Shown here piece after piece: positions 947 to 16,195 of a stretch of DNA of 64,000 bases. Within the stretch, counting starts at the first letter, position 1, and every line of letters begins with the position of its first letter. A program made the position numbers and the translations under genes. Below the pieces are notes generated by a model. It saw only the letters and a list, made by a program, of their open reading frames with translations, searched no databases and had not been told where the DNA came from. The stretch spans positions 302,161-366,160 of the IMG/VR virus record IMGVR_UViG_3300012988_000001, one strand, 5' to 3'.

Positions 947-1341
947 TCCAAGACTTAATTGATGTTTATTATTACATTAAAAGCGTTGATGACCTTCAAG
1001 ACCTTGAGGGTTGGGCATTTACTGCCGCCACGTCATCCCATGCGATAACAATTGTCCCAACGTGGAATGCAACGTATACTGATCGTAAATGGGAAATTAA
1101 AATAACCACTGGTAACATAAATGATTATCGGTGGATTTTTTTGACCAAAAATCAGGTAGAAGTATTCCATTACTGGAAATATCGTTACGCAATATCAATT
1201 CCCGGATTAATCACCGAGAATGAATCTGATATGTTGATGAAATTCATCAGTACTAATGAGATTTCTATTATAAATCAGATCTTACTTGAAATGCGTAAAT
1301 TAGAGAACAGGAGCGTTCCTTATGAACGAACTAAATCGTAA
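943..1341 (+). CDS. hypothetical protein, paralogue of 554..946
   Basis: overlapping ATGA coupling; sequence similarity to upstream ORF. Confidence 0.8.
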   Translation: MIQDLIDVYYYIKSVDDLQDLEGWAFTAATSSHAITIVPTWNATYTDRKWEIKITTGNINDYRWIFLTKNQVEVFHYWKYRYAISIPGLITENESDMLMKFISTNEISIINQILLEMRKLENRSVPYERTKS

Positions 1342-1837
1342 TAGAGATTACTTCAAACTATTGGCTGAAGAGTTTAGCCATGATATGATTGATGTTCTTT
1401 CTGATGAACCGTGTTTTACTGTTGACTTTTGGAATGGGGAAGAGTATGATTTTAACATCATAGACAACCAAAGTTATCTCCGTGACTATTGTCCGAATTT
1501 CACAGGTGACGTTCATCTCTTTACAAACAAGATCCATGTATGTTATACTCCTGATAACGGCGACATTGAATTGCGTGAGATGTTCCACTTCAATACGTCC
1601 GAGTACGGTGTACCGTCCGAGTACTGCAAAGATGAGATTCATGATAGTGATGCAAATATTATCATTATCAAGAAAGATACTTTCTGGTACAATGACGAAG
1701 AGTACAGAATGGGAAGTACAGAAGAAGAACGTTTCCAACTTTCCTGTACTGATTTGGGGTACTTCATTGAAGTACTAAATGAAGTGAAACGTTTTATCCT
1801 AGAGGATATTGAAGATCATGGAAAACCAGAAGTATAA
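1322..1837 (+). CDS. acidic hypothetical protein, EExFQ-motif family
   Basis: GGAG SD; STEEERFQLS near C-terminus. Confidence 0.8.
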   Translation: MNELNRNRDYFKLLAEEFSHDMIDVLSDEPCFTVDFWNGEEYDFNIIDNQSYLRDYCPNFTGDVHLFTNKIHVCYTPDNGDIELREMFHFNTSEYGVPSEYCKDEIHDSDANIIIIKKDTFWYNDEEYRMGSTEEERFQLSCTDLGYFIEVLNEVKRFILEDIEDHGKPEV

Positions 1838-2237
1838 AGAAATGTTTCAAAATATGCTATTTGATGCAGACTTCGAATTCGGCTTTGTAAGCGGTTCTAA
1901 TTATAAGTTCTTCATCAAGGCGGCTGGCTATCGCATCACTTGGGATCGTTTGGCACATACTATCGAATTGCCATCCCTTGATGAAGCAGGTTCAGTACGA
2001 ACGAATGCTAAATCTTCGCATGGCATGACTCCTGCACAAATGGTCAACCTATTAAAAGGTCAGTCAACTAAGCAGGAGTACTACATCCCTACTTCACAAG
2101 AAGACGAGTTCCAAGCTAGTACTGCTAGGGTTGGTAACATATTACCATTTGTGTTAGTAGAACATCTTGAACGCTTACTTAGTGTTGCACAGGAATGTAT
2201 TTCTCGGTACTCAATTGATGAGAGGAAGTATAAATGA
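1818..2237 (+). CDS. hypothetical protein, EExFQ-motif family
   Basis: GAGG SD; SQEDEFQAST motif. Confidence 0.8.
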   Translation: MENQKYKEMFQNMLFDADFEFGFVSGSNYKFFIKAAGYRITWDRLAHTIELPSLDEAGSVRTNAKSSHGMTPAQMVNLLKGQSTKQEYYIPTSQEDEFQASTARVGNILPFVLVEHLERLLSVAQECISRYSIDERKYK

Positions 2238-2494
2238 AAGATGCACACGGCATTGAGATTACAGAAGGTTGTACTCTCATGTTCGCACAGCGTGAACCAG
2301 ACAAATGGAATCCACGTGATATGATTTTCCGTAAAGTAGAGAAGATTGATCCCGCCTTTGGTGGTCGTATCATCTTTGAAGACAAAAACCAAAATAGCAT
2401 TGCTTACAAGCAAAACATCACAACTCTCCGTGTAGTATCGGAAAGTTTTGTAAAGGCTTGGGAAAGTGGTGAATTGTTTATGAGGGAATTCTAA
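2234..2494 (+). CDS. hypothetical protein
   Basis: coupled ORF with GAGG SD; MKDAHGIEITEG start typical of small phage YopX-like beta proteins. Confidence 0.75.
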   Translation: MKDAHGIEITEGCTLMFAQREPDKWNPRDMIFRKVEKIDPAFGGRIIFEDKNQNSIAYKQNITTLRVVSESFVKAWESGELFMREF

Positions 2495-2736
2495 TGAGTA
2501 ATAAGTACTTTGTACGTTATAGTTACAATGTAACCAACAAGGTTCCACGTGGTGATGGTCTTGGTTGGGGTTATGAAACTGAACAAGTGACCGATTCTTG
2601 TGTATGTGAAATCGATCCAGAGCATATTGATATATCTGAAGTACGTCATACTGTACTTCGTTATGAACTCAATTATTTGGGTGAACGTAAACCAGATGCA
2701 TATGATATTGATATTTTAGTACTGAATAAACTATGA
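2494..2736 (+). CDS. hypothetical protein
   Basis: TAATG coupling. Confidence 0.75.
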   Translation: MSNKYFVRYSYNVTNKVPRGDGLGWGYETEQVTDSCVCEIDPEHIDISEVRHTVLRYELNYLGERKPDAYDIDILVLNKL

Positions 2737-2906
2737 TTAACTATATCTTTCGTGTAAGGGGTAAAGGTATTGTTCCCGGATTGACAGTTGTTCGTGCGTA
2801 CACTGCAACTGATGCTCGTGAAATGCTACTAGCTGAATTCAGCAAGCCCGAAGACGTTACGATCACTTTGGTTGAATGTAGTCAAGAATTATCGTTTTTA
2901 AACTAG
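2733..2906 (+). CDS. small hypothetical protein (57 aa, not in ORF track)
   Basis: ATGA overlap with upstream stop; MINYIFRVRGKG...SFLN*. Confidence 0.6.
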   Translation: MINYIFRVRGKGIVPGLTVVRAYTATDAREMLLAEFSKPEDVTITLVECSQELSFLN

Positions 2907-3007
2907 GACATATTGCGTGATCTGGTTTTATCGTGTAGAATGAGGCTAAAATCATTTGTAAATGCGTTAGAAGCGGAGTCGGGGTTGAATTCCCCGAATG
3001 TCCACCA
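2906..3007 (+). ncRNA. degenerate class II (Leu-like) tRNA or tRNA mimic
   Basis: GGACAT/ATGTCC acceptor, A+CCA, T-arm CGGGG-TTGAATT-CCCCG with non-canonical loop, 8-nt anticodon loop GGCTAAAA. Confidence 0.5.
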
Positions 3008-3009
3008 CC

Positions 3010-3097
3010 GGGAGAGTGATGGAAAGGCATACATAGGCATCTCCAGTGTCTTAGTCTTGATGACAATGCAAGGTTCGAGTCCTTGTCTCTCCCACCA
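3010..3097 (+). tRNA. atypical class II tRNA (Leu-like body, ambiguous anticodon TCC or CCA)
   Basis: GGGAGAG/CTCTCCC acceptor, A73+CCA, T-loop TTCGAGT, variable arm GTC/GAC; anticodon stem AGGCA/TGTCT with loop TCTCCAG; one extra pair between T and acceptor stems. Confidence 0.65.
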
Positions 3098-3245
3098 AAC
3101 AATAATACCTATCATCTAATATCAGTACTGGTGGCGTGTCGTCGAGGACGATGGACAGTACTGACAGGATACCTCGTTCGCCAGCAGTGGGTTCGGGGGA
3201 TGTACGTAAAGTCGTGCTGGGTATGCCAAATTATTTAAAAAACTT

Positions 3246-3274
3246 GGGACAAAACATGAATTTTGTCCTATAAT
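3246..3274 (+). promoter_or_regulatory. class II promoter GGGACA-N12-TGTCC-TATAAT
   Basis: one of five conserved copies with 17-nt spacing. Confidence 0.75.
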
Positions 3275-3295
3275 ATACGTACAAGAGGAAATGAT

Positions 3296-3511
3296 ATGAA
3301 AGCTAAAAACCTGCTGGCGATGTTACAAAACAACCCAGAAGCTGAAATTATTATGCGTGAGCAAGGCTACGAAGTTGATGCGTTCAACGAAGTGTCCACC
3401 GCTCATTTGTACCGCCAAGGTGATGTTGTTTTTGAACGTGGTGAAAACTTCACTGATTTCATCGATGATGAAACCGCAGAGGCTTTAGTCGATATCATCG
3501 TCCTATCATAA
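3296..3511 (+). CDS. hypothetical protein
   Basis: GAGG SD, directly after class II promoter. Confidence 0.8.
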   Translation: MKAKNLLAMLQNNPEAEIIMREQGYEVDAFNEVSTAHLYRQGDVVFERGENFTDFIDDETAEALVDIIVLS

Positions 3512-3545
3512 ATTGTAAATTTGCTAATTGGAGAATCCAAAGAAT

Positions 3546-4127
3546 ATGAAATTAACCCTACGTAAAGCTCATCGTTTAGTTAAAGACCTACAGAACAAGT
3601 TAGGTGTTCGTAATGTTTCCAAGAACATTCACCACAGTGCTGACCTTGCTGAAGTAACAGCAACCATTGCACTTGTCGAAGGTCTAAACCGTGCTAGTGT
3701 TGAACAAACCCTAGACGTAGCAACAGCGATTAGTGAAATCCGTGCAGCAGTACAAGTACTAAACGCTCGTGACGTAGATGGTGATACCATCGATTCTCTA
3801 CTAAACGCTAAGGTTCTAGTAGAAACCAAGATGAAAGTACTTTCATCATTCGCGTATCCTACACAGCAGGATCAAGAAGGCCGTGAACTAGCGATTCGTC
3901 GCCAAGTTTCTGACGTTGCGAAACACGCTGGCTCAGGCATGTACCACAACGAAGTAACTGTTAGTGGTCACAGTGTTGATTCACATACCCTATTCAATGA
4001 ACAGTACGTTGCATTGAAACAGGAACAAGAACGCATTAGCGATAAGCTAGCGTACATCAATAACGCTCTACACGTAGAGATTGATGACAAGTATCTTGAA
4101 CTATTCAAGACACTACAAGTTTTATAA
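3546..4127 (+). CDS. coiled-coil protein (MKLTLRKA...) followed by structured non-coding RNA
   Basis: helical heptad pattern; biased codon usage suggesting high expression. Confidence 0.8.
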   Translation: MKLTLRKAHRLVKDLQNKLGVRNVSKNIHHSADLAEVTATIALVEGLNRASVEQTLDVATAISEIRAAVQVLNARDVDGDTIDSLLNAKVLVETKMKVLSSFAYPTQQDQEGRELAIRRQVSDVAKHAGSGMYHNEVTVSGHSVDSHTLFNEQYVALKQEQERISDKLAYINNALHVEIDDKYLELFKTLQVL

Positions 4128-4400
4128 GGTAGCTTAACCGCTGACCTCCCTTTACCGAAAGGGCATATAGATGTTAAATCTATACTTTACATGGTATGAA
4201 AGATTGTCTGAGGACACTTTTTCGAATAAAGAGTTTGCTGCCATCTACACTATTTTACAGATTATTTCTTGCTTGTTTGTGAAATGGCTTAACTCGATTG
4301 TCCGGTTGCTATGTTGCATGTTTGCATTGTTGCTTCGCTCTTTCGGTAACGTATCTTGGTCCCGTTCTGATGTAAATAGAATGGGACACCCTATTAATTT
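4128..4400 (+). ncRNA. putative structured RNA
   Basis: 13-bp long-range helix TTACCGAAAGGGC (4152-4164)/GCTCTTTCGGTAA (4337-4349), hairpins TATAGAT/ATCTATA and GTCCCGTTCT/AGAATGGGAC. Confidence 0.55.
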
Positions 4401-4415
4401 AAACACGAGGTGCTT

Positions 4416-4985
4416 ATGAATCTTGAGAAGTTTAATCCAAAGAAAGTAAAAGACCTACCATTGCGAAAGTATAATCTAATGCTTCTGGATGGACGATATA
4501 TGCAGTGTATGGAATTGGAATATGTTGAAGACGGTCCAATGACACAAACTGTTTATTACTTTGTTAGTACTGACAGGCAAACGAAAGTAACACCGAAAGA
4601 GGTTGAATCGTTTTGTCGCTATATTCATTTTGATTATGTAGCAGTTGGTAATGGATTTGCTCTCACTAAAAACGGTTCAAAGATATTTCGTGAAAACGTG
4701 TATGGTGTAATTGAAAACGAACAATATGCACAGCACTTCATTATTAATATGAACAATAACGCAAACACTTACACTCCTGATACAATTCATCGTAATGATA
4801 TCGTTGAATGTATTGACGGTCATTTCTACAATGGTGATAAAGCCATTGTTACTGAAGTACGCAAACCGTATGATGTAGAAGACCACGGAACCGTTGAAGT
4901 GTATATGCTTGATAAGAAGTTTTTTGAGCACTTCACTTACACCGGATGGAATCAATTCTTGAAGGTGGTGGAAAAATACGACTAA
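4416..4985 (+). CDS. hypothetical protein (possible C-terminal KOW/SH3-like domain)
   Basis: GAGGTG SD; DIVECIDGHFYNGDKAIVTEV. Confidence 0.75.
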   Translation: MNLEKFNPKKVKDLPLRKYNLMLLDGRYMQCMELEYVEDGPMTQTVYYFVSTDRQTKVTPKEVESFCRYIHFDYVAVGNGFALTKNGSKIFRENVYGVIENEQYAQHFIINMNNNANTYTPDTIHRNDIVECIDGHFYNGDKAIVTEVRKPYDVEDHGTVEVYMLDKKFFEHFTYTGWNQFLKVVEKYD

Positions 4986-5017
4986 TGTACTAAATACTCC
5001 TTTAAGTAGGAGTAAAT

Positions 5018-5368: not shown

Positions 5369-5382
5369 AGTTAGAGCGGTTG

Positions 5383-5545
5383 TAGCCAGTACAGGGCAGT
5401 ACGTAGGAGTAGTGACCTATTAGTATCCTGTGGTCTTAATAGACTTTCACGAGGTCAGTACATACGTTAGTCACTTTTCGTATGTAGGAATAAAGCTGAT
5501 AAAAAATGAGTAAGTATACCATTCACTGGTTAGGGTGGGCTTACG
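5383..5545 (+). ncRNA. putative multi-branched structured RNA upstream of tRNA-Gly
   Basis: closing TAGCCAGT/ACTGGTTA, internal TGACCT/AGGTCA, CTATTA/TAATAG, ACATACG/CGTATGT. Confidence 0.45.
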
Positions 5546-5549: not shown

Positions 5550-5625
5550 GCGGTAGTAGCTCAGATGGTAGAGCGGGAGTTTTCCAAACTTCAGGTCTTC
5601 GGTTCGAAACCGAATTATCGCTCCA
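5550..5625 (+). tRNA. tRNA-Gly (TCC)
   Basis: 76-nt cloverleaf, D-arm GCTC/GAGC, loop TTTCCAA, TTCGAAA T-loop, U73 + CCA. Confidence 0.95.
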
Positions 5626-5636
5626 CGAGGTAAAAT

Positions 5637-6185
5637 ATGTATAATAAGAAGATAGAAATATCTGGCATTAACAATGGTTACCAATATTTTATTGATTATG
5701 AACATCCATTAGCAACCGGAAATTCAGGAAGGGTGTATTTACACCGTCACATCGCATCAATTAAAATTAGTCGATGGGTTACTGGTAATGAACATGTTCA
5801 CCATATTGATGAAAACAAACTTAATAATGATGAAGTTAATTTGGAAGTACTATCAGATCTTGAACATCGTCGTTTACATTGGAAAGAAAGAAATAATTTG
5901 CCAGATGATTACGAATGGTTTGATTCTGAAATTATTCCATGTAATTGGTGCTCAGAATTATTTCAAACGAAATATAAAGATCACATGTATTGTTCTATTA
6001 GTTGCGGATCATTAGCACAACCACAAAAATTCCCAATTGATAAAGATATATTATCCGAATTGATTTGGAAAATGCCAGCCACTGAGATAGCCAAAATATA
6101 TGGTTGCTCTGATAAAACCATCGGTAAAAAATGTAACCGATATAATATAACCAAACCACCACGCGGTTATTGGTTGCGTAAATAA
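5637..6185 (+). CDS. HNH homing endonuclease
   Basis: YLHRHIA...EHVHHIDENKLNN..NLEVLSDLEHRRLH HNH motif, CxxC and C-terminal HTH-like tail; sits next to a tRNA. Confidence 0.9.
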   Translation: MYNKKIEISGINNGYQYFIDYEHPLATGNSGRVYLHRHIASIKISRWVTGNEHVHHIDENKLNNDEVNLEVLSDLEHRRLHWKERNNLPDDYEWFDSEIIPCNWCSELFQTKYKDHMYCSISCGSLAQPQKFPIDKDILSELIWKMPATEIAKIYGCSDKTIGKKCNRYNITKPPRGYWLRK

Positions 6186-6522: not shown

Positions 6523-6560
6523 GCCGATAGTATGATCATCTACTATCGGCTTTTTTCTTA
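6523..6560 (+). terminator. intrinsic terminator
   Basis: GCCGATAGTA/TACTATCGGC hairpin followed by TTTTTT. Confidence 0.8.
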
Positions 6561-6574: not shown

Positions 6575-7063
6575 ATGAACACTAAGAATCTAGCAAAGTA
6601 CGTAATGCGTAGATGTAAACTATTAAGTACTTTTAATGCTGACATGTGGAGTAATAAGGTAGATAATAAATTCCATGCTGGACGTGTATTCAACACAGCT
6701 AAAATACCAGCAGGAACGGTGCGTCAATCCCTTTATATGAGTACTGACGGTACTATCTATATGGGAATCCTTGATTGTGATCCGGGATTTGGGAATGATG
6801 AAATTGAACTAGATATTGAGTACAATTTCGATACTCGTGTTATTACCTTAAATTATAATAACATTACTCTTCAAGAAGCATATGAAGACATGGAAGATGA
6901 TGAAGAAGATTGCTTTACTGTTTCTTATGAACTTACTGATTCCGAAGCAGAGTACTTCCAAACTAGCTTAGTTGAAGATCCTATGTTTGAATTTGAAGAT
7001 GAATTAATGATGATTACATTCTTTGAAACAATTCGTGAACGTTTCTATAAGGTTAAATCATGA
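6575..7063 (+). CDS. acidic protein, EExFQ-motif family
   Basis: SEAEYFQTSLV. Confidence 0.8.
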   Translation: MNTKNLAKYVMRRCKLLSTFNADMWSNKVDNKFHAGRVFNTAKIPAGTVRQSLYMSTDGTIYMGILDCDPGFGNDEIELDIEYNFDTRVITLNYNNITLQEAYEDMEDDEEDCFTVSYELTDSEAEYFQTSLVEDPMFEFEDELMMITFFETIRERFYKVKS

Positions 7064-7569
7064 AGAATATTACAACACCAGATCGCAAGGCATTTGATTT
7101 GATTATGGGATTTATCGAAGATTACGATTGCTGTAATATGGCAACGTATGATTCAGTAATACACCACAATAACGCTCTAAACAATGAACAGTACTACAAT
7201 TCTGAACGTACTGATATGCATTGTTTTAAATCTAGTCTTGGTAATCATCCATTAGAAGTAACACTAAAATTTGGAACACAGGAAGATATGAGTTTCCTCA
7301 TCTATCCAAAGAATGAGAATGGTATACGTCTTATCAACTTCATGTACAATTTTGATGATGCTAATGGTGATGAAGAATGGTATGAGAAGTCAAACCATTG
7401 GTGGGCTGATTTTTGTATTGAATTGTATGATACAGAGGAAGAATACTTCCAAGCTAGTACGGTTGATGATCTACTTCTAACTCCAGAGGAAAACCAAATG
7501 TTTATTGATTTCAATAATGCATTTACCCAACATTTGATCAAACGCATAGGAGAAAAACACTATGGATAA
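7060..7569 (+). CDS. acidic protein, EExFQ-motif family
   Basis: TEEEYFQASTV. Confidence 0.8.
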   Translation: MKNITTPDRKAFDLIMGFIEDYDCCNMATYDSVIHHNNALNNEQYYNSERTDMHCFKSSLGNHPLEVTLKFGTQEDMSFLIYPKNENGIRLINFMYNFDDANGDEEWYEKSNHWWADFCIELYDTEEEYFQASTVDDLLLTPEENQMFIDFNNAFTQHLIKRIGEKHYG

Positions 7570-7786
7570 TCAACACCGTAAAATTACAGGCTATCGTGAA
7601 CTAAGTGCAGAAGAGATTGCACTCATGAATGAAGTCAAAGAAATGAGTGCTCAAGTAGGGCAGTTAATTGAGAAACTACACTCAACCCCAGACGTTGACA
7701 AACGCTGGCTAAATATTGCCAAGACAGATTTACAGAAAGGCTTCATGAGTGCTGTACGCAGCGTTGCAAAGCCTGATTCATTCTAA
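7562..7786 (+). CDS. acb2: Acb2/Tad1-family cyclic-nucleotide sponge (anti-CBASS)
   Basis: MDNQHRKITGYRELSxEEI...RWLNIAKTDLQKGFM...R.VAKPDSF closely matches the recalled Acb2 signature. Confidence 0.9.
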   Translation: MDNQHRKITGYRELSAEEIALMNEVKEMSAQVGQLIEKLHSTPDVDKRWLNIAKTDLQKGFMSAVRSVAKPDSF

Positions 7787-7795
7787 GGATAGAAT

Positions 7796-8476
7796 ATGGA
7801 CAATTACGAACACACCCCCGGTGGTAAACCTTTTGACGATTTAGATGCGTATTTCGATGATGACCATCTATCAGAAGAAGATAAAAAACTACTTGCTGAA
7901 CTAGATGCGATCGATGTTAATACAGCAGAACTAGCAGTAGAGTTTACCGACCGTGACCTAGTACATAATAGTATGCTAATGGGTCGTATGGCTAAACTAA
8001 AAGGCCACGCTAATAACGTAGACTGTTGCTCTTACACTTACGTAATCAACGTATATCAGAAAGACCCCGCCGCAAGTACTTTTAAGTACACTCGTGTATA
8101 TGAATTCGCTGATAATGTATCCATCTCTCTAATGGAACTATTCAGTACTCAAGGTTGTAACTTCATCAAGCGTAGTACCACACAGTGCTTTGGTGCTGAT
8201 GAACTACATAACCCACACATTGAACTTGAACAACGTGCAGTTTATGTGTATGATTTAATTGTTCCAGAAGGTTTTGATATTGATGCAACGCATTATCATT
8301 ACTTCTCTCACATCATTTCGTTTGAACCGTGGGAACAAATTGAGGAACATTGGAATTCTGAACTCGAAGATGGTTGGGTTGACAGTCTCCCTGACCACCG
8401 CCACCTAGTTCTTCACAGCACGTCACCGCACCAGCTTGACACACGCAGTGCTATCTACATCCGTGACATAAAATAG
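7796..8476 (+). CDS. acidic hypothetical protein
   Basis: AGGA SD, 226 aa. Confidence 0.8.
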   Translation: MDNYEHTPGGKPFDDLDAYFDDDHLSEEDKKLLAELDAIDVNTAELAVEFTDRDLVHNSMLMGRMAKLKGHANNVDCCSYTYVINVYQKDPAASTFKYTRVYEFADNVSISLMELFSTQGCNFIKRSTTQCFGADELHNPHIELEQRAVYVYDLIVPEGFDIDATHYHYFSHIISFEPWEQIEEHWNSELEDGWVDSLPDHRHLVLHSTSPHQLDTRSAIYIRDIK

Positions 8477-8535
8477 TTGACACCGAGCCTGTACTGATGT
8501 AAAATTGGTACAGGCTTTTTAATTGGAGGATTCCT

Positions 8536-9018
8536 ATGTTTGTCGAAGCAGCCTTTATGGAGCAACTTGATATGCTCCCAATTCCCACGGACAAGGCACA
8601 GGTACGCTTTGATCCACCGGACAGCACTCACTACCGTGACGGTCCCGGACACCCTAGCATGTATATCCTGAATGCACCACTGAAGACGTACTTCTATAGT
8701 ACTGAAACGATGTGCTTCCTATCTCTAGATCTCAATGAAGAAATATCTTATAACTTCACTTGGTGGTTTGCGGATAATAAATTTGCAGCGAGCCTTGTTG
8801 ATCTAAATGAATTGTACTGTGAGGACACCGTACCAATTCGCGATACTATCAAGTTTGGTATATTCCACGATACCGAGGAAGAACATTTCCAAAAGGATTG
8901 CCATAAAGGTACTCCACTATCCTGGGATGCTGAACAGTTAGTACAGAAGAAGTTAACGGCACTAGCTGATTTCTATCTTAACCAGTACTATAACAATTTC
9001 CTAGTAAGGAGTGAATGA
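8536..9018 (+). CDS. EExFQ-motif family protein
   Basis: DTEEEHFQ; GGAGG SD. Confidence 0.8.
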   Translation: MFVEAAFMEQLDMLPIPTDKAQVRFDPPDSTHYRDGPGHPSMYILNAPLKTYFYSTETMCFLSLDLNEEISYNFTWWFADNKFAASLVDLNELYCEDTVPIRDTIKFGIFHDTEEEHFQKDCHKGTPLSWDAEQLVQKKLTALADFYLNQYYNNFLVRSE

Positions 9019-9440
9019 TGTTTGATTTGCTATCACCTAAAGTACTTGAGATTACACGCCAGCGTTTATTAGGTCTTTCAAAAACTGAGATCTTTGCAGC
9101 ACAACCAGAGCTACGTGAAGAACGCAATGAGTTCTTAATGAACTACGGCGATCAAGGCCGTGCTTATTACTTTGACTTCAACATTGATCTCGAAGATGGT
9201 TCGCGTGGTATTGAAGGATGTATCTCTGAAGATACTTTCAAGTTCACAGAGTACACCAGTAAAGATGAAAAGATCTTCAAGTTGGATATTCGTAAGCTAC
9301 CATCTAAGATGGGTGAAGATGAATTCTTCCAGTACTCTCTAGTTACAGACATTGGGGATTTGACAGTAGAGCAGCTTCATGCTATTCTTGTAATCCGTGA
9401 TATCATCCGTGAAGAAAAAATTGATTGGGGTGTAAAATGA
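9015..9440 (+). CDS. EExFQ-motif family protein
   Basis: GEDEFFQYSLV. Confidence 0.8.
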   Translation: MMFDLLSPKVLEITRQRLLGLSKTEIFAAQPELREERNEFLMNYGDQGRAYYFDFNIDLEDGSRGIEGCISEDTFKFTEYTSKDEKIFKLDIRKLPSKMGEDEFFQYSLVTDIGDLTVEQLHAILVIRDIIREEKIDWGVK

Positions 9441-9583
9441 AAGATAAACTAGAGAGCTATTTGTTTGTACTCGTGTTCATTTGGATGTGTCTGAAAGAAA
9501 CAGTACTTAATACTCCTTGGATGCTTTTTGTACTGGGTATCATCGTAGCAACCGGTTTCGCATATTTTGTCGGAATTATTTAA
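9437..9583 (+). CDS. small membrane protein (48 aa, not in ORF track)
   Basis: ATGA overlap; hydrophobic. Confidence 0.55.
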   Translation: MKDKLESYLFVLVFIWMCLKETVLNTPWMLFVLGIIVATGFAYFVGII

Positions 9584-9590
9584 AAAACTT

Positions 9591-9619
9591 GGGACAAAAT
9601 GAACTTTTTGTCCTATAAT
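9591..9619 (+). promoter_or_regulatory. class II promoter
   Basis: GGGACA-N12-TGTCC-TATAAT. Confidence 0.75.
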
Positions 9620-9626
9620 ATAAGTA

Positions 9627-9720
9627 CAGGAAGGGATGGGTCATCGGGACCGTAGAAAGCGAAGGGTGCAATGAGCGACGGCAATAGATGCATATAGTAG
9701 TGGCTTTAGGAACCTTCCTG
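9627..9720 (+). ncRNA. putative structured small RNA
   Basis: starts just after class II promoter; closed by CAGGAAGG/CCTTCCTG, internal CCGT/ACGG; G-rich relative to genome. Confidence 0.5.
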
Positions 9721-9729
9721 TGAAATTTC

Positions 9730-9810
9730 GTTGAGTAGCTTAAGGGAGAGCCGCAGGTAATAACGATAAGGTCACCTGTCAGCGTGGATTAAAACACCAC
9801 CTCAACAACA
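9730..9810 (+). ncRNA. tRNA mimic
   Basis: GTTGAG/CTCAAC acceptor-like stem, D-arm-like TAGCTTAAGGGAGAGC, GCAGGT/ACCTGT arm with 15-nt loop, degenerate T-arm, no encoded CCA. Confidence 0.5.
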
Positions 9811-9816
9811 CAATTT

Positions 9817-9867
9817 GGAATCCAACAGCAATTTAATCATCGGCTTATATGAAAAACAATGGATTCC
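9817..9867 (+). ncRNA. hairpin element with ACAGCAA motif
   Basis: perfect GGAATCCA/TGGATTCC stem with ACAGCAA directly 3' of the 5' strand. Confidence 0.4.
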
Positions 9868-9873
9868 AGCTTT

Positions 9874-9961
9874 CGGGGTATGGTCAAATTGGTAAAGGCA
9901 CGACACTTAAAATGTCGCGGGGAATTTCCCCTTCTCGGTTCGAGTCCGAGTACCCCGACCA
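9874..9961 (+). tRNA. tRNA-Leu (TAA)
   Basis: CGGGGTA/TACCCCG acceptor, CGACA-CTTAAAA-TGTCG, long variable arm, A73+CCA. Confidence 0.95.
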
Positions 9962-9984
9962 CATTAATAGAATAGGATAAACAT

Positions 9985-10413
9985 ATGTTTACTCCAGAAG
10001 AATATGAGTTTTACAATATACAATTAGACCGTTCATTGAATGGTGAAATAGTTCTTAATGATGTTTTATGTAAAGCAGAAGAGATGGACCCAGTTGCGTA
10101 TTGGCACGATGGTGATGATGCTGTATTTGGTGAATTCACTAATGTAACTATATACAACAGTACTGATCCTAGAATGGATTATTACATTGACATATTCCCA
10201 GATCACATTGATTTTGAATATAGTGGGAATACAGGTAATCCAAGTGAACTATCACGTGTTTTGCGTACTGAACTATTCAGTACTGAAAGCGATGAAGAAT
10301 TCTTTCAAGTTGGGACTATTCAAGATCTTACCTTTATGGAAGAAACAATATTACGAAAATTTATTAAATTGTCCCTCATGGCAAGGACTAATTTAAACAA
10401 CAGGGAAAGCTAA
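9985..10413 (+). CDS. EExFQ-motif family protein
   Basis: SDEEFFQVGTI. Confidence 0.8.
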   Translation: MFTPEEYEFYNIQLDRSLNGEIVLNDVLCKAEEMDPVAYWHDGDDAVFGEFTNVTIYNSTDPRMDYYIDIFPDHIDFEYSGNTGNPSELSRVLRTELFSTESDEEFFQVGTIQDLTFMEETILRKFIKLSLMARTNLNNRES

Positions 10414-10441
10414 TGCTTTCCTTTTTTTATGAGGGTATAAA

Positions 10442-10921
10442 ATGCAAAAGCCTTTAGATTTCTGCGTTAAGTTCAATAGAAAAGTAAATCAAGCTATTCT
10501 TAGTTCAATCCTTGAATGTGCATTTGAATTGTATTCTTATGGACTGAGGAATGAAAAGTTTGAATGGGAAAATAGTAAAGACAATGCATGTACTTTATTT
10601 GACATAGACTTTTATAACAGTGGTAATGGTACTATTGAACCATTGGAAGCAATGACTAACATTGTTATTACAATCAAGAACCACAAATTAACTGAAGATC
10701 TTCAATTCAATGTTATTGACATTTTCAATGACCGCATTGAATTGTGTGCTGAAGTTAATGGCGACTCGATCTTAACAATCCCGCTCACGAAGTACACCGA
10801 TGTTGATGAAGGATACGTATTCCAGATTGAGACTGACTCACCTATCATGCCATTCACCGTGCAGCATCTAGAATTGATTCAAAAGTATTCATCAATACTT
10901 GACGACGACTACGAAGACTGA
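10442..10921 (+). CDS. hypothetical protein, divergent EExFQ family
   Basis: DEGYVFQIET at equivalent position. Confidence 0.75.
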   Translation: MQKPLDFCVKFNRKVNQAILSSILECAFELYSYGLRNEKFEWENSKDNACTLFDIDFYNSGNGTIEPLEAMTNIVITIKNHKLTEDLQFNVIDIFNDRIELCAEVNGDSILTIPLTKYTDVDEGYVFQIETDSPIMPFTVQHLELIQKYSSILDDDYED

Positions 10922-10954
10922 TATAATTATTCCATCTTAATGAAGGAGTGAATT

Positions 10955-11176
10955 ATGAAAAAAATCATCTTGCTCGCCTTGTTAGCCTTGAGTGCTAACG
11001 CAAGTGCTCGTGAATATGATGTGATCTGCAAATGGACTGACGGTACTAAAGAAGTCTATACACAGAAAGAAGTGTGGACTGTTACTGTCAATCAAGGTGG
11101 TACAACCATTCAATTAAACGATGGTACTCGCATTGAGTACTCAAACGCAGTTCAATGTAAGGTGGTGGGAAAATGA
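10955..11176 (+). CDS. small secreted protein, paralogue of 11173..11418
   Basis: signal peptide (ANASA); GTxIxLxDG...YSxAxQC. Confidence 0.8.
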   Translation: MKKIILLALLALSANASAREYDVICKWTDGTKEVYTQKEVWTVTVNQGGTTIQLNDGTRIEYSNAVQCKVVGK

Positions 11177-11418
11177 AAACTATCTTAGCTATGATGTTAG
11201 TACTTTTCAGTACTCAAGTGTTTGCTACCGACTACGTAATGTGTAATAACCCAATGCATATGACTGTAGACAAATACAGTAGTGATGAATATGTATCATT
11301 CAGCATTAGTCGCGATGGTACTGAAATTGAATTACGTGATGGACAGGTTCGTGTTTATTCCCCGGCAATTCAATGTTACCATGAAGATAACACAAAGGCT
11401 GCTAAACATGACAAATGA
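11173..11418 (+). CDS. small secreted protein
   Basis: signal peptide; same two-Cys motif. Confidence 0.8.
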   Translation: MKTILAMMLVLFSTQVFATDYVMCNNPMHMTVDKYSSDEYVSFSISRDGTEIELRDGQVRVYSPAIQCYHEDNTKAAKHDK

Positions 11419-11726: not shown

Positions 11727-12650
11727 ATGATTTCTAAAGAAACACTATATCGTTTTCTGGTAGCACTGGACAAACAGTACGGCAACAGTGTTGAGTACTT
11801 TATGGTAAATCCATACAATGAGATTCAGCATAAATTGGCTGAATTACAGAAACTACGGGATGAGCATGAAATGTGCGTGTGTTGGGATTTCCGTGCACCA
11901 CATGATATCGAATCCTATGACATTTCTGATATGTTTGACATTCGCGATCGCCTTGCAGTTGCACAATCCCCAGAATATCTACGTCTTGGAGTATACACTA
12001 ATAGTGCCGATCCACGCGTATCTTTAACTCCTGATTCTGAACTCTTCCAGAAGATGGCTAAGTTGTTTGTCGAAACCGATGATATTGTGGCATATATGCC
12101 GACTGACGTGATCGCAATCGATGATATGTCATTCACTGTACATGATATCCTTTGTGCAATCAACGAACACGCAGAACCGACACGTTTGAAGAAACACATT
12201 ATCGGTGATCGCTATGTTAAAGTGAATAGTGAAGATTTGACTATTGGTAGTACTGAATGCTATTCGGACGAAATGATTGATAAAATTGAAAAGGTAGCAG
12301 ATAAAGTACTTCCATATTGGAATGGTACTAAAGATTATACATATCCAGAAAGTGATGAATATGTAGGGTGGGAGGCAATCTTTGACGGTGAGAATCCTGT
12401 TCTAACCGACGACAACGTAATCTACTTATGTTGTAATAAACCAGACTATGATACTACTCGTGATAATATTCCAGCACTAACCAACTTGGTGGACTTCATG
12501 TGGGATACTGAAGATAAGTTCGTTGGTATTATGCTTATTCGTGCAATAACACAGGCGAAGATTAGTATTTCGTATAAAGATGTTCCCCGCTTTAAAGATT
12601 ACGTAAATGATAATGCTCTTTACGTTCGTGAAATTCGCTACATGCAATAA
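11727..12650 (+). CDS. hypothetical protein
   Basis: GGAG SD; long acidic ORF. Confidence 0.8.
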   Translation: MISKETLYRFLVALDKQYGNSVEYFMVNPYNEIQHKLAELQKLRDEHEMCVCWDFRAPHDIESYDISDMFDIRDRLAVAQSPEYLRLGVYTNSADPRVSLTPDSELFQKMAKLFVETDDIVAYMPTDVIAIDDMSFTVHDILCAINEHAEPTRLKKHIIGDRYVKVNSEDLTIGSTECYSDEMIDKIEKVADKVLPYWNGTKDYTYPESDEYVGWEAIFDGENPVLTDDNVIYLCCNKPDYDTTRDNIPALTNLVDFMWDTEDKFVGIMLIRAITQAKISISYKDVPRFKDYVNDNALYVREIRYMQ

Positions 12651-12694
12651 TCTTTATGGGGAAGTAATACTTCCCCTTTTCTTAAGGAAGAGTT

Positions 12695-13117
12695 ATGTCC
12701 CTTTTAAAAGTACTTAAACAAATAGATGAAGAATTTGATTCACTATATAGTCCAGTATCTCACCATAGAGTCCCTATTCCGAAAACAGTAATGGAAATAG
12801 TGTTCAATTGGGGATGGAGTGCAAGTGACAAGCCCTATAGTATTAGATTTGAATGGTTCCCTGCACAGGATAGATATTGTCTATTAATTGATGTGAATGG
12901 TTCAGATGAATTCATATACAATTCATGGGATTTAACTAATAAAGGACATACTTGGAATGAAGACTTTGCAATAGAATTTGATATAGAACGTGGATTCTTT
13001 GATTGCCTACCAATGGCATATCCAATGACAACCAATTTTAAGTACGAGCATATTGCAGTACTTAAGAGTATTTCTGACAAATACGCGGAGAAGAAAATTA
13101 TACACAACATGAAATGA
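12695..13117 (+). CDS. hypothetical protein
   Basis: AAGGA SD. Confidence 0.75.
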   Translation: MSLLKVLKQIDEEFDSLYSPVSHHRVPIPKTVMEIVFNWGWSASDKPYSIRFEWFPAQDRYCLLIDVNGSDEFIYNSWDLTNKGHTWNEDFAIEFDIERGFFDCLPMAYPMTTNFKYEHIAVLKSISDKYAEKKIIHNMK

Positions 13118-13129
13118 CAAGAGGTGAAT

Positions 13130-13378
13130 ATGAAATGTGACAAGGCCATAGAGAAAATGCGTCGGAATAAACGTAACTGGACTATTCCTAAGCTGAAAGT
13201 GATTGCTACACGTTGTGGTATGACTGTAGAATCAAATGGTTCAACACATCACGTATTCAGGGTAGAAGGTGTCAAAGAACACCTATCAATACCCTTTAAT
13301 GGTAAAGATATCCACCCGGATTATATTACCAAATTTTTACGTCTTATTGATAAGACAAAAACCGAAGGAGAACAGTAG
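13130..13378 (+). CDS. hicA: HicA-like mRNA interferase (dsRBD fold), no adjacent HicB
   Basis: WTIPKLKVIA..CGM.V..NGSTHHVFR....HLSIP...IHPDYITKFL.LI resembles HicA; GAGGTG SD. Confidence 0.7.
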   Translation: MKCDKAIEKMRRNKRNWTIPKLKVIATRCGMTVESNGSTHHVFRVEGVKEHLSIPFNGKDIHPDYITKFLRLIDKTKTEGEQ

Positions 13379-14637
13379 TGATTGCAGAGTATATGGCAAC
13401 CTTCAGTAGTATGATGAAGGAATATCCGTGGATGGTTGGTATCTATTCCCTATACGGGATGACAGTACTAACATATTGTTTAAAATTCATTCCCGGATTT
13501 TTTGGTTTTATTAAAGCTCAAAGTATTACAACACTAGAGCTAAACAACGCTGGCTGGAGTGGCAATGAAGCACACTTTCAAGCATTCATGGCGTGGTATC
13601 TAAAGAGTCCATATTCCAAATGGTCACGCTATCTTTCACTAGATGGAAAGTACTCTCGTTGGGATGATGACGAAGACGAAAGTCCAGATGGGAAGAAACG
13701 CAAAACATACGTAATTGGTGCTGGTTATGGTACACACTTCTTCTTCTATAAGAAGCGTCTATTCTGGTTCAGCAAAGGTTCACTACAAAGTACAGGTTCA
13801 GAAAAAGAGAAACAAAATATTGTTATTAAAACTCTCGGTCGTAACCAACAACCACTAATTGACTTAGTAGAAGATTTCGCTGTTAAACCAAAAGAAACTG
13901 ATCTAAACATCTTCTCATACAAAGAAGAATGGGATGTTATTTCGCGAGTTAACAAACGCCCACTATCATCTGTAATTCTACGTAAAGACATTAAAGATGC
14001 ATTAGTGAAAAATCTTGAGTACTTCTACTCTAATCGTGATTGGTATGTCAAACGTGGACTATCATATAAGCAAACTTATATTCTACACGGTCTACCGGGT
14101 ACAGGTAAAAGTAGTACAATTAAAGCACTAGCTTCACATTTCAACAAGAACATCTGCCTAATTGATATTACATCATTAGGAAATGCAGCGTTCGAGAAAG
14201 CAATGGCTTCAGTGCCTAAAAATAGTATTGTACTAATTGAAGACTTTGATTCATGTCGTGCTTTACATTCACGTGTAGAAGATGATAGTGATGATCCAGC
14301 ATCTAAGCTAGCAGAGCTAACCGAAGTGCTATCACTATCTAAAGTACTAAACGTACTAGATGGTGTAGTATCACTAGATGATACAGTTGTTTTCCTAACA
14401 ACCAACCATCTAGAGAAAATTGATGCAGCACTAATCCGTAAAGGTCGTGTTGATTACATTCACGAGATTCCATATCTTGAGGATGCAGAAGTAAAAGAGT
14501 ACATAAAGCTAATGTATCCAGAAGCTGAAGTACCACAAGTTACATTTGACACTATAGCAGGTTGTGATATTCAATCTAATTACCTAGAGCATCGCGAAGA
14601 TGTTAATGCATTCGTGGCAAGTCTAGCAGTCAAATAA
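13378..14637 (+). CDS. BCS1-like AAA+ ATPase with N-terminal membrane anchor
   Basis: TM segment, BCS1_N-like GxGxHFFFY region, Walker A GLPGTGKS, Walker B IEDFD, LNVLDG, TTNH..IDAALIRKGRVD. Confidence 0.85.
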   Translation: MIAEYMATFSSMMKEYPWMVGIYSLYGMTVLTYCLKFIPGFFGFIKAQSITTLELNNAGWSGNEAHFQAFMAWYLKSPYSKWSRYLSLDGKYSRWDDDEDESPDGKKRKTYVIGAGYGTHFFFYKKRLFWFSKGSLQSTGSEKEKQNIVIKTLGRNQQPLIDLVEDFAVKPKETDLNIFSYKEEWDVISRVNKRPLSSVILRKDIKDALVKNLEYFYSNRDWYVKRGLSYKQTYILHGLPGTGKSSTIKALASHFNKNICLIDITSLGNAAFEKAMASVPKNSIVLIEDFDSCRALHSRVEDDSDDPASKLAELTEVLSLSKVLNVLDGVVSLDDTVVFLTTNHLEKIDAALIRKGRVDYIHEIPYLEDAEVKEYIKLMYPEAEVPQVTFDTIAGCDIQSNYLEHREDVNAFVASLAVK

Positions 14638-14678
14638 TAGGTTGGCACAGAAATGTGCCATATTAATCGGAGGACATT

Positions 14679-15086
14679 ATGGCAGAAGTTAAACTTAAAC
14701 TAAAAGAGCGTTGGGTTGATATTAAGACCAACAAAGTAATTCAAAGTATTGTCACTGAAGAATCCATTCACATTGATGATGACCTAGATCAAGAAGCAAT
14801 GAAGCAATACTATCTTAAAGAACGTATTGGAAGTTCTGAACATGATGGGGTTCGTCATGAAGTATCAATTGTGGGAGAGGGTCTATCTAAGTCAGAGATG
14901 TTTGACTTCATTCTAAACAATGCAGTATCGATTGATCCTGATAACACTACGTGGACCAAATACCATGAAGATGGTACTGAAGAAAAGTTTAAAAAGAAAT
15001 ATACGGTATCTATCAATGGTCATGGTATGAGTGGGTTTGATCTAGAAGATGCAATCAATTACTATGTTCGGGAGATTCAGAAATGA
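14679..15086 (+). CDS. hypothetical protein
   Basis: GGAGG SD. Confidence 0.8.
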   Translation: MAEVKLKLKERWVDIKTNKVIQSIVTEESIHIDDDLDQEAMKQYYLKERIGSSEHDGVRHEVSIVGEGLSKSEMFDFILNNAVSIDPDNTTWTKYHEDGTEEKFKKKYTVSINGHGMSGFDLEDAINYYVREIQK

Positions 15087-15406
15087 TTCTAACAATGGCT
15101 ATTATTTGTATCACAATAGTTGTGTGTTTTATTATTCGGTACAGTGCAATTGTTCACTGTCAAAATATTGAGTACCGCATATATCAGGATTTACATAAAA
15201 AAGAGTTGGCCTCCTATGGTGTACGTCCTTATTTTTATAATGGTGGTGAGAAGCGTGAATCATTCTGGGGATATGTTGTCTATGATGAAATGAATGACTG
15301 TATCTATAAAGGTGCGGATAAAGATAACACCAATTTTATAATTTATCGCCGGGAAGGAGATGCAGAGATCTTTGCCGCAAAAGTGAGGAAAATGCATGGC
15401 CTCTAA
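15083..15406 (+). CDS. membrane-anchored hypothetical protein
   Basis: N-terminal hydrophobic helix. Confidence 0.75.
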   Translation: MILTMAIICITIVVCFIIRYSAIVHCQNIEYRIYQDLHKKELASYGVRPYFYNGGEKRESFWGYVVYDEMNDCIYKGADKDNTNFIIYRREGDAEIFAAKVRKMHGL

Positions 15407-15761
15407 AGAACACTATGATGTTTGTTATGCTTTACTAAAACGGTTTGTTACTCTTGTGCGTGACACTGGTAGCTTGCATGGTATGTCATGGTCATTTAGT
15501 CCACGTAAAGTCCAGATTGATGATATAATCAATCACACAGGTATAATCATACGCAAGGATAAGATCTATGTGCAAGCAAAAGGTCTTAGTCCACACGATA
15601 CGCTTGAGCGGGTTTTCAGTGCGAGTGCATCTTTTCAGAAGTCGTGCAGTACTGAATACTTCTGTGATAAGGCTATGGAAGATTTAATTGTTGAGGTGTT
15701 CAAAGCACACCACGATTACATTAGTGATAGTCTATTAGTCGGTTATTGGGAAGAAATATAA
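15396..15761 (+). CDS. hypothetical protein
   Basis: coupled ORF, GAGG SD. Confidence 0.75.
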   Translation: MASKEHYDVCYALLKRFVTLVRDTGSLHGMSWSFSPRKVQIDDIINHTGIIIRKDKIYVQAKGLSPHDTLERVFSASASFQKSCSTEYFCDKAMEDLIVEVFKAHHDYISDSLLVGYWEEI

Positions 15762-16195
15762 TGGCTATTATCAAACATGCGAGTTGGAGCAAAAGTATGG
15801 AATACACCAACAAGCAGAAGATTAAAGAGAGAACCTTAGAGCATATAGTCCAAGCTATTATAGAGTTGGAAGAGAATAAAACAAGAACCTACTCATGCGA
15901 TCTACAAGATGAACGCTTTATAGTTTCCAAATCTTTGTATAGTTCATCCTTTAAAGTTGTCGTGACCATTGATTCAATGACAATCTACTGGATGAGTGAT
16001 CGAGTAGATATGAAACGTGCTAAGTGCGAGGAAGAACTTTTCCAGATGATGTGCTTAGATGATACGTACTGCGACGAAGAGTTCGAGGAAGGTATCAAAT
16101 TATTAGTAGAACTACATATCCAACGCATACTCAAACAGAGCGGTATTGGAGGATTCAAAGAAGGTGTTTATGACAATCAGCCAAACTGTGAATAG
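15761..16195 (+). CDS. hypothetical protein, EExFQ-like
   Basis: CEEELFQMM. Confidence 0.75.
   Translation: MAIIKHASWSKSMEYTNKQKIKERTLEHIVQAIIELEENKTRTYSCDLQDERFIVSKSLYSSSFKVVVTIDSMTIYWMSDRVDMKRAKCEEELFQMMCLDDTYCDEEFEEGIKLLVELHIQRILKQSGIGGFKEGVYDNQPNCE

What the first reader, a model, noticed from the sequence alone, without database searches (positions are those of the whole stretch)
1322..16195. Dispersed acidic paralogue family sharing a C-terminal EE(E)(F/Y)FQxS motif
Seen: otherwise dissimilar 140-170 aa proteins carry EEERFQLS (1322), EDEFQAS (1818), EAEYFQTS (6575), EEEYFQAS (7060), EEEHFQ (8536), EDEFFQYS (9015), DEEFFQVG (9985), EGYVFQ (10442) and EEELFQ (15761). In eight of the nine the motif lies 31-41 aa from the C-terminus. 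Inference: a second tag system, in which a shared helix docks a diverse set of effectors on one partner or targets them for capsid packaging or injection.
Basis: partly seen in the sequence, partly recalled or inferred. Interest (0 to 1): 0.62.

Follow-up and report, generated by a model that had tools for sequence, protein, structure and literature searches.

The report
Forty-copy jumbo-phage protein family
The nine motif-bearing genes belong to an undescribed family of about 40 small acidic proteins per genome in RaK2-like giant phages; members share only a near-invariant C-terminal helix-loop-helix on otherwise unrelated sequences, they are probably early host-takeover proteins rather than packaged cargo, and their function is unknown.

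Summary
All nine ORFs carry the motif, and "31-41 residues after FQ in eight of nine" is exact. The motif is in 8 ORFs of window 1-17 kb against 0.065 in shuffles. The window is the end of a complete 366-kb RaK2-like jumbo phage. Profile searches raise the family to at least 41 paralogues here, with no decoys recruited. Relatives hold 10-36 copies, and there are 118 clusters in 1.84 billion proteins. No Pfam, NCBIfam, PDB or fold match was found.

The consensus is (T/S)EEEΦFQxS(T/L)VxD followed by an amphipathic helix. All detectable similarity lies there. The 80-150-residue N-terminal parts do not recognise one another (0 of 40), yet they are conserved between orthologues. Synonymous codons vary freely at the invariant residues, so selection acts on the protein.

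AlphaFold2 places the motif at the start of a helix (pLDDT about 95) inside one compact α+β domain, so it is not a free tag. In fENko-Kae01 only 1 of 36 members was seen by LC-MS/MS, which argues against capsid packaging. The genes sit among tRNAs in the putative early region and diverge faster than their neighbours.

Best reading: fast-evolving early host-interaction proteins built on a conserved C-terminal keystone. Docking on a common partner remains possible and untested.

The parts
1322..1837 (+). Family member, 171 aa, pI 4.3; motif EEERFQLS at nt 1721-1744 (aa 134-141)
   Evidence: ORF and motif. Leave-one-out profile E 2.9e-4; external-only HMM E 0.03. Positional orthologue is ENKO_429 at 43% identity.
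1809..2237 (+). Weakest member, 142 aa (139 aa from the ATG at 1818), pI 6.3; motif EDEFQAS at nt 2100-2120, one residue shorter than the consensus
   Evidence: No leave-one-out or external-HMM hit. Recruited only by the iterated in-genome profile. Its positional orthologue ENKO_430 matches profile A2 at E 2.2e-4.
6575..7063 (+). Family member, 162 aa, pI 4.3; motif EAEYFQTS at nt 6944-6967; follows a terminator-like hairpin at 6523-6550
   Evidence: Leave-one-out E 3.7e-8; external HMM E 1.4e-7. BLASTP to 7060-7569 gives E 7e-5, confined to the C-terminal 41 aa.
7060..7569 (+). Family member, 169 aa, pI 4.5; motif EEEYFQAS at nt 7435-7458; start overlaps the stop of the previous member; this is the protein modelled
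   Evidence: External HMM E 2e-9. AlphaFold2 gave pLDDT 78.6 and pTM 0.74; the motif is helix 126-135 with pLDDT about 95.
8536..9018 (+). Marginal member, 160 aa, pI 4.6; motif EEEHFQKD at nt 8875-8898; preceded by a TTGACA-17-TAAAAT promoter-like site at 8477-8505
   Evidence: No leave-one-out hit; external HMM E 0.04. Positional orthologue ENKO_440 matches profile A2 at E 1.8e-6.
9015..9440 (+). Best window member, 141 aa, pI 4.6; motif EDEFFQYS at nt 9315-9338
   Evidence: External HMM E 1e-12; phrog_17453 E 4e-9, function unknown. AlphaFold2 puts the motif in helix 101-110, the highest-pLDDT stretch. Orthologues at 53-80% identity keep both the N- and C-terminal parts.
9985..10413 (+). 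Family member, 142 aa, pI 4.1; motif DEEFFQVG at nt 10291-10314; follows tRNA-Leu at 9874-9961 and ends at a terminator-like hairpin at 10402-10423
   Evidence: Leave-one-out E 6e-4; external HMM E 4.9e-4.
10442..10921 (+). Divergent member, 159 aa, pI 4.3; degenerate motif EGYVFQIE at nt 10808-10831
   Evidence: Leave-one-out E 0.008. Not hit by the external HMM.
15746..16195 (+). Divergent member, 149 aa (144 aa from the ATG at 15761), pI 5.2; motif EEELFQMM at nt 16028-16051, with 49 residues after FQ
   Evidence: Leave-one-out E 6.9e-4. Not hit by the external HMM. Positional orthologue is ENKO_452.

Best explanation
The nine genes belong to a lineage-specific multigene family of RaK2-like jumbo phages, with at least 41 copies in this 366-kb genome. 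Each protein is small (125-217 aa) and usually acidic. It has a paralogue-specific N-terminal part, predicted as one or two helices plus a 5-6-stranded antiparallel sheet. It ends in a shared C-terminal helix-loop-helix with the consensus (T/S)EEEΦFQxS(T/L)VxDΦGΦTΦE, followed by an amphipathic helix.

Shown: the family is real. Its only sequence signal is this C-terminal module. Selection acts on the protein. The copies are old, positionally conserved and fast-evolving. They are rarely detected in phage-particle preparations.

Inferred: the motif is the N-cap (T/S), the acidic first turn and the aromatic anchor (ΦF) of the helix that clamps onto the sheet. On this view it is the structural keystone of one compact domain, which stays fixed while the rest of the surface diversifies. 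The proteins are made early and stay in the cell. Each uses its own variable surface to bind or block a different host or defence component, as host-takeover or anti-defence inhibitors.
For: Family reality:
- Iterative profiles grow from 9 to 41 ORFs with no decoy among 6x shuffled or reversed ORFs.
- An HMM built only from 80 external sequences finds 37 ORFs before the first decoy.
- There are 118 clusters worldwide, nearly all with the motif.
- Relatives hold 36, 32, 30, 29, 27 and 10 copies (fENko-Kae01, Munch, K64-1, RaK2, EJP2, CBB).

Protein-level selection: the invariant F uses TTC 23 times and TTT 18 times, Q uses CAA 21 and CAG 16, and S uses both AGT and TCN codons.

Keystone reading:
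- Two AlphaFold2 models of different members give the same order of elements. The motif helix is the most confident segment, at pLDDT 90 and about 95. The second model is one domain with pTM 0.74.
- T/S followed by acidic residues at the start of both C-terminal helices fits the helix N-capping pattern, and the hydrophobic positions have i/i+3/i+4 spacing.
- BFVD matches to other RaK2-like phage proteins span the full length.

Not virion cargo: 1 of 36 members is LC-MS/MS-flagged in fENko-Kae01, against 128/578 overall (p = 0.0014) and 16/101 neighbouring genes (p = 0.03). None of 12 in RaK2 is flagged (PMC11218385).

Early, arms-race-like behaviour:
- The genes lie in + strand arrays of short ORFs mixed with tRNAs and HNH genes.
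- In CBB most copies fall in CBB_390-546, which its authors propose as the early host-takeover region (PMC5259590).
- Positional orthologues with fENko-Kae01 have a median identity of 34%, against 57% for neighbours (p = 1e-6).
- N-terminal parts are conserved within an orthologue group at 53-78% identity.
Against: - No function was observed, and no member of the family has been characterised.
- The complete lack of profile signal in 80-150 N-terminal residues (0 of 40), set against near-invariance of polar residues E126, Q131, S133 and D137, is more extreme than a purely structural core usually gives. It would also fit a conserved binding site.
- I could not get model coordinates, so burial of these residues is untested.
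- The common fold of the N-terminal parts rests on two models (pLDDT 68 and 79) built from alignments that carry little information in that region.
- Early expression is inferred from gene position and from published promoter predictions in a relative, not measured. The sigma-70-like site count in window 1-17.5 kb equals that of shuffles (62 against 60).
- The fENko-Kae01 preparation was an ultrafiltrate, not pure virions, and small acidic proteins can escape mass spectrometry.
Confidence: 0.5

Rival explanations
1. Adaptor model, the surviving half of the reader's idea. The invariant C-terminal helix-loop-helix is a docking module that plugs about 40 different N-terminal target-binding parts into one conserved host or phage machine, such as a protease, polymerase or chaperone. 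This would resemble the way F-box or PRANC modules work in eukaryotic and poxviral multigene families.
For: All family signal is confined to about 45 C-terminal residues, while the N-terminal parts are mutually unrecognisable yet constrained within orthologue groups. The conserved positions include many polar or acidic residues (T125, E126, E127, Q131, S133, D137, E143), as expected of an interaction surface. Copy number varies from 10 to 41 among genera, as it does in other adaptor families.
Against: No partner is known. AlphaFold2 packs the module into the domain rather than leaving it exposed. The one candidate I could test by phyletic pattern is the BCS1-like AAA ATPase at 13378-14637. It is absent from EJP2, RaK2 and CBB, all of which have the family.
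Confidence: 0.27
2. Capsid-targeting or injection tag. The motif directs the proteins into the prohead so that they are injected with the DNA.
For: These are small acidic proteins, as some phage internal proteins are. One member, ENKO_077, was detected by LC-MS/MS in a fENko-Kae01 preparation.
Against: Only 1 of 36 members is flagged in fENko-Kae01, significantly fewer than the genome average. None of 12 is flagged in CsCl-purified RaK2 (PMC3622015). The genes lie outside the structural clusters. The genome's prohead protease is T4 gp21-like, whose known sites are (L/I)xE (my own knowledge), and the residues before the motif's glutamates do not fit that pattern consistently. The known T4 targeting sequences are N-terminal (my own knowledge).
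Confidence: 0.05
3. Proteolytic processing site. The consensus ExxΦxQ followed by x-S resembles the sites of 3C/NIa-type proteases, so the family could be cleaved after the glutamine.
For: Only the pattern resemblance of EEEYFQ|xS to ExxYxQ|(S/G) (my own knowledge).
Against: The motif is predicted as a well-packed helix. No NIa-like protease was found in the genome, although that search had no positive control. The residue after the glutamine is variable.
Confidence: 0.02
4. Not a protein feature. The motif reflects chance, composition, gene conversion or a DNA or RNA element embedded in the genes.
For: None found.
Against: The enrichment is over 100-fold above shuffles. Synonymous codons vary freely at invariant residues, including both serine codon families. 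The motif is conserved in distant phages at 15-20% overall identity.
Confidence: 0.01

Closest known systems
PHROG families of unknown function (phrog_17453, 13866, 30111, 24941, 21500 and others)
   Same: Window members hit these phage protein families, mostly through their C-terminal regions. They are pieces of the same superfamily.
   Different: PHROGs splits the family into many small groups and assigns none a function. No Pfam or NCBIfam model covers it. The unifying motif and the 30-40-copy expansion were not mentioned in the papers I searched.
Paralogue sets noted in RaK2-like phage genome papers (RaK2: 'nearly 10% of gene products are paralogues'; CBB: 22 paralogous ORFs)
   Same: Same phage clade, and the same genome regions of short hypothetical ORFs (PMC3622015, PMC5259590).
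   Different: Those papers used pairwise similarity and name no family or motif. Profile searches here show 29 copies in RaK2 and 10 in CBB belonging to one family.
Viral multigene families with a conserved short C-terminal docking module on variable bodies (poxvirus ankyrin/PRANC F-box-like proteins; my own knowledge)
   Same: The architecture is alike: a variable N-terminal part plus a short, highly conserved C-terminal helical module, with many copies per genome and variable copy number.
   Different: There is no sequence or fold relation. No partner is known here, and the module appears packed into the domain.
T4 internal proteins with a capsid targeting sequence (my own knowledge)
   Same: Small phage proteins that share a short sequence and are otherwise diverse.
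   Different: The T4 signal is N-terminal, is cleaved off, and its cargo is found in virions. Here the motif is C-terminal and helical, and members are nearly absent from particle proteomes.
MAM33/p32 (gC1qR) acidic proteins
   Same: These are acidic proteins with an N-terminal helix, an antiparallel sheet and two C-terminal helices. They appear as weak hits for both models (1p32 E 0.12; 7te3 Z 4.7, 3qv0 Z 4.2, 1yqf Z 3.9).
   Different: The scores are within the noise for this tool (Z under 8), TM is about 0.2, and there is no sequence similarity. This is not evidence of kinship.

Membership tests
The family itself (undescribed; working definition) | C-terminal signature (T/S)EEEΦFQxS(T/L)V followed 30-60 residues later by the C-terminus | tested here: met
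   Present in all nine window ORFs in more or less degenerate form, in 41 genome ORFs and in nearly all 118 external clusters.
The family itself (undescribed; working definition) | Significant match to a profile that does not contain the protein | tested here: inconclusive
   Met for 6575, 7060, 9015, 9985 and 15746 (E below 1e-3) and for 1322 (leave-one-out E 2.9e-4). Marginal for 10442 (E 0.008) and 8536 (E 0.04). Not met for 1809.
T4-type capsid-targeted internal proteins | Presence in purified virions | tested here: not met
   From published proteomes of relatives only: 1 of 36 in fENko-Kae01 and 0 of 12 in RaK2. This phage itself was not tested.
T4-type capsid-targeted internal proteins | N-terminal targeting peptide ending in a prohead-protease site | tested here: not met
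   The shared element is C-terminal, and the N-termini share nothing.
MAM33/p32 fold | Structural match clearly above background over the whole domain | tested here: not met
   Best Z is 4.7 with rmsd 4.5 over 105 residues; Foldseek E 0.12 with TM about 0.2.
SUKH/SMI1-KNR4 and other immunity-protein families | Pfam or fold match | tested here: not met
   No Pfam hit at E up to 1. None appears among the top Foldseek or VIA rows.
Known acidic DNA-mimic anti-restriction proteins (Ocr, ArdA) | Sequence or fold similarity; binding to restriction enzymes | tested here: not met
   No Pfam, PDB-sequence or fold hit. Binding is not testable with these tools.
3C/NIa protease substrates | A cognate protease in the genome and an exposed site | tested here: inconclusive
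   PF00863 was not found, but the control genomes were also silent. The site is predicted helical and packed.

The most novel reading that the evidence does not exclude
RaK2-like jumbo phages run a modular adaptor system. About 40 paralogues per genome use one nearly invariant C-terminal helix-loop-helix, (T/S)EEEΦFQxS(T/L)VxD plus an amphipathic helix, to plug 40 different target-binding bodies into a single conserved host or phage machine. This would be a phage counterpart of the F-box/PRANC logic, built on a fold with no solved relative.
Probability: 0.2. Interest if true: 0.8.

Novelty: new member of a known kind. Interest (0 to 1): 0.5.

Why it matters
About 7% of the genes of a whole clade of 350-kb enterobacterial phages belong to this one family, on my rough estimate of 600 genes per genome. 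The clade includes phages being considered for Klebsiella, E. coli and Salmonella therapy. No database names the family, and no solved structure resembles the models.

The family gives a single handle on dozens of 'hypothetical proteins' at once, through one motif and one profile. It also offers a clean experiment. Mutating F, Q or S of the motif in several paralogues, and then asking whether they misfold or lose a shared partner, would decide between a scaffold and a docking module. If the members are anti-defence or host-takeover factors, the family is a large natural library of binders on one small scaffold.

Tried and rejected
- Pfam, NCBIfam and PDB-sequence profile searches found nothing.
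- Foldseek against PDB (twice), VIA-align wide (twice), the ESM Atlas by shape and the Atlas look-alike search gave no match above background. BFVD returned only uncharacterised proteins of RaK2-like and other large phages.
- The homodimer prediction for 7060-7566 gave no verdict (ipSAE 0.00). This is no evidence either way.
- The word-based protein search on 9015-9437 found only close unnamed orthologues. Cluster look-ups gave no names.
- PA5oct has RNA-seq and virion data, but it has no family member, so its timing data cannot be used.
- The sequencing-run search found DNA holders in soil, plant, wastewater and isolate runs but no RNA run. I did not lay reads.
- The BCS1-like AAA ATPase at 13378-14637 was rejected as an obligate common partner on its phyletic pattern.
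- The TEV-like cleavage idea and the T4 gp21 site idea found no support.
- A DNA-level element or gene conversion was rejected on codon variation.
- N-terminal-only profiles were an attempt to prove full-length homology by sequence, and they failed. The common fold therefore rests on structure prediction only.
- I first misread the query coordinates and thought a conserved nucleotide stretch lay inside ORF 1809-2237. After adding the offset it lies in non-coding DNA.
- Fusions: the longer external members (P0011, P0034, P0045, P0125) carry no Pfam domain. P0051, at 995 aa, looks like a low-complexity false positive.
Full report
**Setting.** The window is the last 64 kb of a single 366,160-bp virus record with direct terminal repeats, rated complete by CheckV, at 38% G+C. 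Nucleotide and protein matches place it among the RaK2-like enterobacterial jumbo phages. The closest is Klebsiella phage fENko-Kae01, with which the region is syntenic gene for gene. Window 1-17 kb is a + strand run of short ORFs. It is interrupted by tRNA genes at 5550-5625 and 9874-9961, with an ARAGORN-only call at 3012-3097. It also holds an HNH endonuclease, a DUF1353 protein and a BCS1-like AAA ATPase.

**Observation.** All nine ORFs and motifs are as described, and 31-41 residues follow FQ in eight of the nine. The pattern is far above chance. It is found in 8 ORFs in window 1-17 kb against 0.065 in shuffles, and in 21 against 1.4 genome-wide.

**Extent of the family.** Iterated profile searches over all ORFs of the genome grow the set from 9 to 41. 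All members are on the + strand. They lie in arrays at genome 19.6-36 kb, 45-49.5 kb, 267-287 kb, 299 kb and window 1.3-16.2 kb, with three members at 102 and 122 kb. No shuffled or reversed decoy was recruited from a sixfold excess.
- A profile search of 1.84 billion representative proteins found 118 clusters, almost all carrying (T/S)EEE(F/Y)FQxS(T/L)V.
- An HMM built only from 80 of these that are under 40% identical to anything in this genome recovers 37 ORFs before the first decoy.
- Whole-record searches give 36 copies in fENko-Kae01, 32 in Munch, 30 in K64-1, 29 in RaK2, 27 in EJP2 and 10 in CBB, and none in the more distant PA5oct.
- Pfam and NCBIfam have no model. PHROGs splits the family into several groups of unknown function.
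- The papers I searched mention paralogues in these phages but not this family.

**Where the similarity lies.** In a 125-sequence alignment, the conserved columns run from T125 to E143 of protein 7060-7569. The counts out of 125 are T/S 99, E 118, E 99, E 72, F/Y/L 95, F 125, Q 120, S 113, T/L 116, V/I/L 117 and D 98. A hydrophobic i/i+3/i+4 pattern then follows in the last helix. When the motif and everything after it are removed, the N-terminal parts of 40 paralogues no longer recognise each other:
- Leave-one-out profiles give 0 of 40 at E below 0.01.
- All-against-all phmmer gives 33 hits at E below 1, against 154 in a fivefold decoy set. This is the chance rate.
- The external HMM finds 1 of 40.

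The N-terminal parts are not junk, however. Orthologues of 9015-9437 keep theirs at 53-78% identity, and every window member has a positional orthologue in fENko-Kae01. The duplications are therefore old, and each copy is individually maintained.

**Level of selection.** The invariant F, Q and S use synonymous codons in about genomic proportions, and serine uses both codon families. This excludes gene conversion or a nucleic-acid element.

**Evolutionary rate.** Family orthologues between this phage and fENko-Kae01 have a median identity of 34%, against 57% for neighbouring non-family ORFs (Mann-Whitney p = 1e-6).

**Structure.** AlphaFold2 on 9015-9437 with the 41 paralogues gave pLDDT 68. 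On 7060-7566 with 125 sequences it gave pLDDT 78.6 and pTM 0.74. Both models have N-terminal helices, a 5-6-stranded antiparallel meander, a short helix that begins exactly at the motif and carries the highest confidence, a loop, and a long terminal helix.

A T/S followed by acidic residues stands at the start of both C-terminal helices. This fits the known helix N-capping pattern, which is an inference of mine. No solved structure matches: the best Foldseek E-value is 0.07-0.15 and the best VIA Z is 5.7-5.8. Only weak recurrent resemblances appear, to p32/MAM33, levivirus coats and CapZ, all of them sheets with helices on one face. I could not obtain coordinates, so burial of the conserved polar residues is untested.

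**Location of the proteins.** The fENko-Kae01 record marks every protein seen by LC-MS/MS. Of its 36 family genes only ENKO_077 is marked, against 128 of 578 genes overall (binomial p = 0.0014) and 16 of 101 neighbouring non-family genes (Fisher p = 0.03) (PMC11218385). That preparation was an ultrafiltrate, so the result is a trend and not proof. In RaK2, where CsCl-purified virions were analysed, none of the 12 members between 161.5 and 184 kb is a 'virion structural protein' (PMC3622015). That count alone is not significant (p = 0.28).

**Timing.** There are no expression data. In CBB most copies lie in or beside CBB_390-546, which its authors propose as the early host-takeover region because RpoD-like promoters cluster there (PMC5259590). 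In the window, a few strong sigma-70-like sites and terminator-like hairpins bracket small operons of members (8477-8505, 10899-10927; 6523-6550, 8485-8517, 10402-10423). The overall promoter count equals that of shuffles, though.

I favour the first of two readings at about 0.5. These would be early, non-virion, fast-evolving host-interaction proteins on one small scaffold. The conserved C-terminal helix-loop-helix would be the keystone that every copy must keep while the rest diversifies.

The contrast between an undetectable N-terminal signal and near-invariant polar residues keeps a second reading alive at about 0.27. Here the module is a docking site for one common partner.

One concrete candidate was tested and rejected. 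The neighbouring BCS1-like AAA ATPase is missing from EJP2, RaK2 and CBB, which all have the family. A homodimer test gave no verdict. Cleavage-site readings have no support.

**Limits.** Function, timing, oligomeric state and partner are all untested. The common fold of the N-terminal parts rests on two predictions. Membership of ORF 1809-2237 is weak, and that of 8536-9018 and 10442-10921 is marginal.

Noticed in passing
window 3097-3243 (non-coding gap between the ARAGORN tRNA call at 3012-3097 and ORF 3263): A stretch of about 135 nt is 84-86% identical to K64-1, EJP2, KP13-7 and RCIP0023, phages that otherwise share no nucleotide similarity with this region. Two invariant blocks flank a variable insert of about 25 nt. 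RNAalifold on three sequences gives a multi-stem structure closed by a 7-bp stem, with 5 compensatory pairs. There is no Rfam hit. It is a candidate conserved non-coding RNA of RaK2-like phages.
   Followed up: partly
window 9735-9801 (non-coding gap 9440-9985, upstream of tRNA-Leu 9874-9961): A 67-nt stretch is 95.5% identical to Klebsiella phages Muenster and phiKp_21, with nothing annotated under the match there. No Rfam family reaches threshold.
   Followed up: partly
window 3246-3274 and 9591-9619: The same promoter-like site (GGGACA, 17 nt, TATAAT) occurs twice. Each copy overlaps a GGACAAAA...TTTTGTCC hairpin followed by CAAGTTTTTT on the minus strand. It is a repeated regulatory-looking element at the head of two gene blocks.
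   Followed up: no
window 13378-14637: This 419-aa ORF has an N-terminal hydrophobic segment, a BCS1_N domain and an AAA domain (E 2e-16 and 1.5e-15). It is the most conserved gene of the region: 76.5% nucleotide identity to fENko-Kae01 and 80% protein identity to Munch. It is absent from EJP2, RaK2 and CBB. Its fENko-Kae01 orthologue ENKO_448 was seen by LC-MS/MS.
   Followed up: partly
window 554-946 and 943-1341: Two adjacent ORFs of 130-132 aa share an N-terminal DLI(E/D)(L/V)YYYIK(N/S) and a similar C-terminal region. They appear to be a second, separate paralogue pair with no Pfam match.
   Followed up: no
window 10955-11176 and 11173-11418: Two adjacent small ORFs (73 and 81 aa) have signal-peptide-like N-termini and similar bodies. 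They look like a duplicated secreted protein or lipoprotein pair.
   Followed up: no
window 5550-6185: An HNH_3 endonuclease ORF (5637-6185, E 7e-7) lies directly after tRNA-Gly 5550-5625. RaK2 and K64-1 have the same tRNA-plus-HNH arrangement.
   Followed up: no
whole genome (public runs): Near-identical copies of window 6575-10921 occur in runs from 13 studies, including isolate-labelled runs of one coded organism and soil, plant, retting, beetle and wastewater metagenomes. This phage or close kin is therefore widespread.
   Followed up: no
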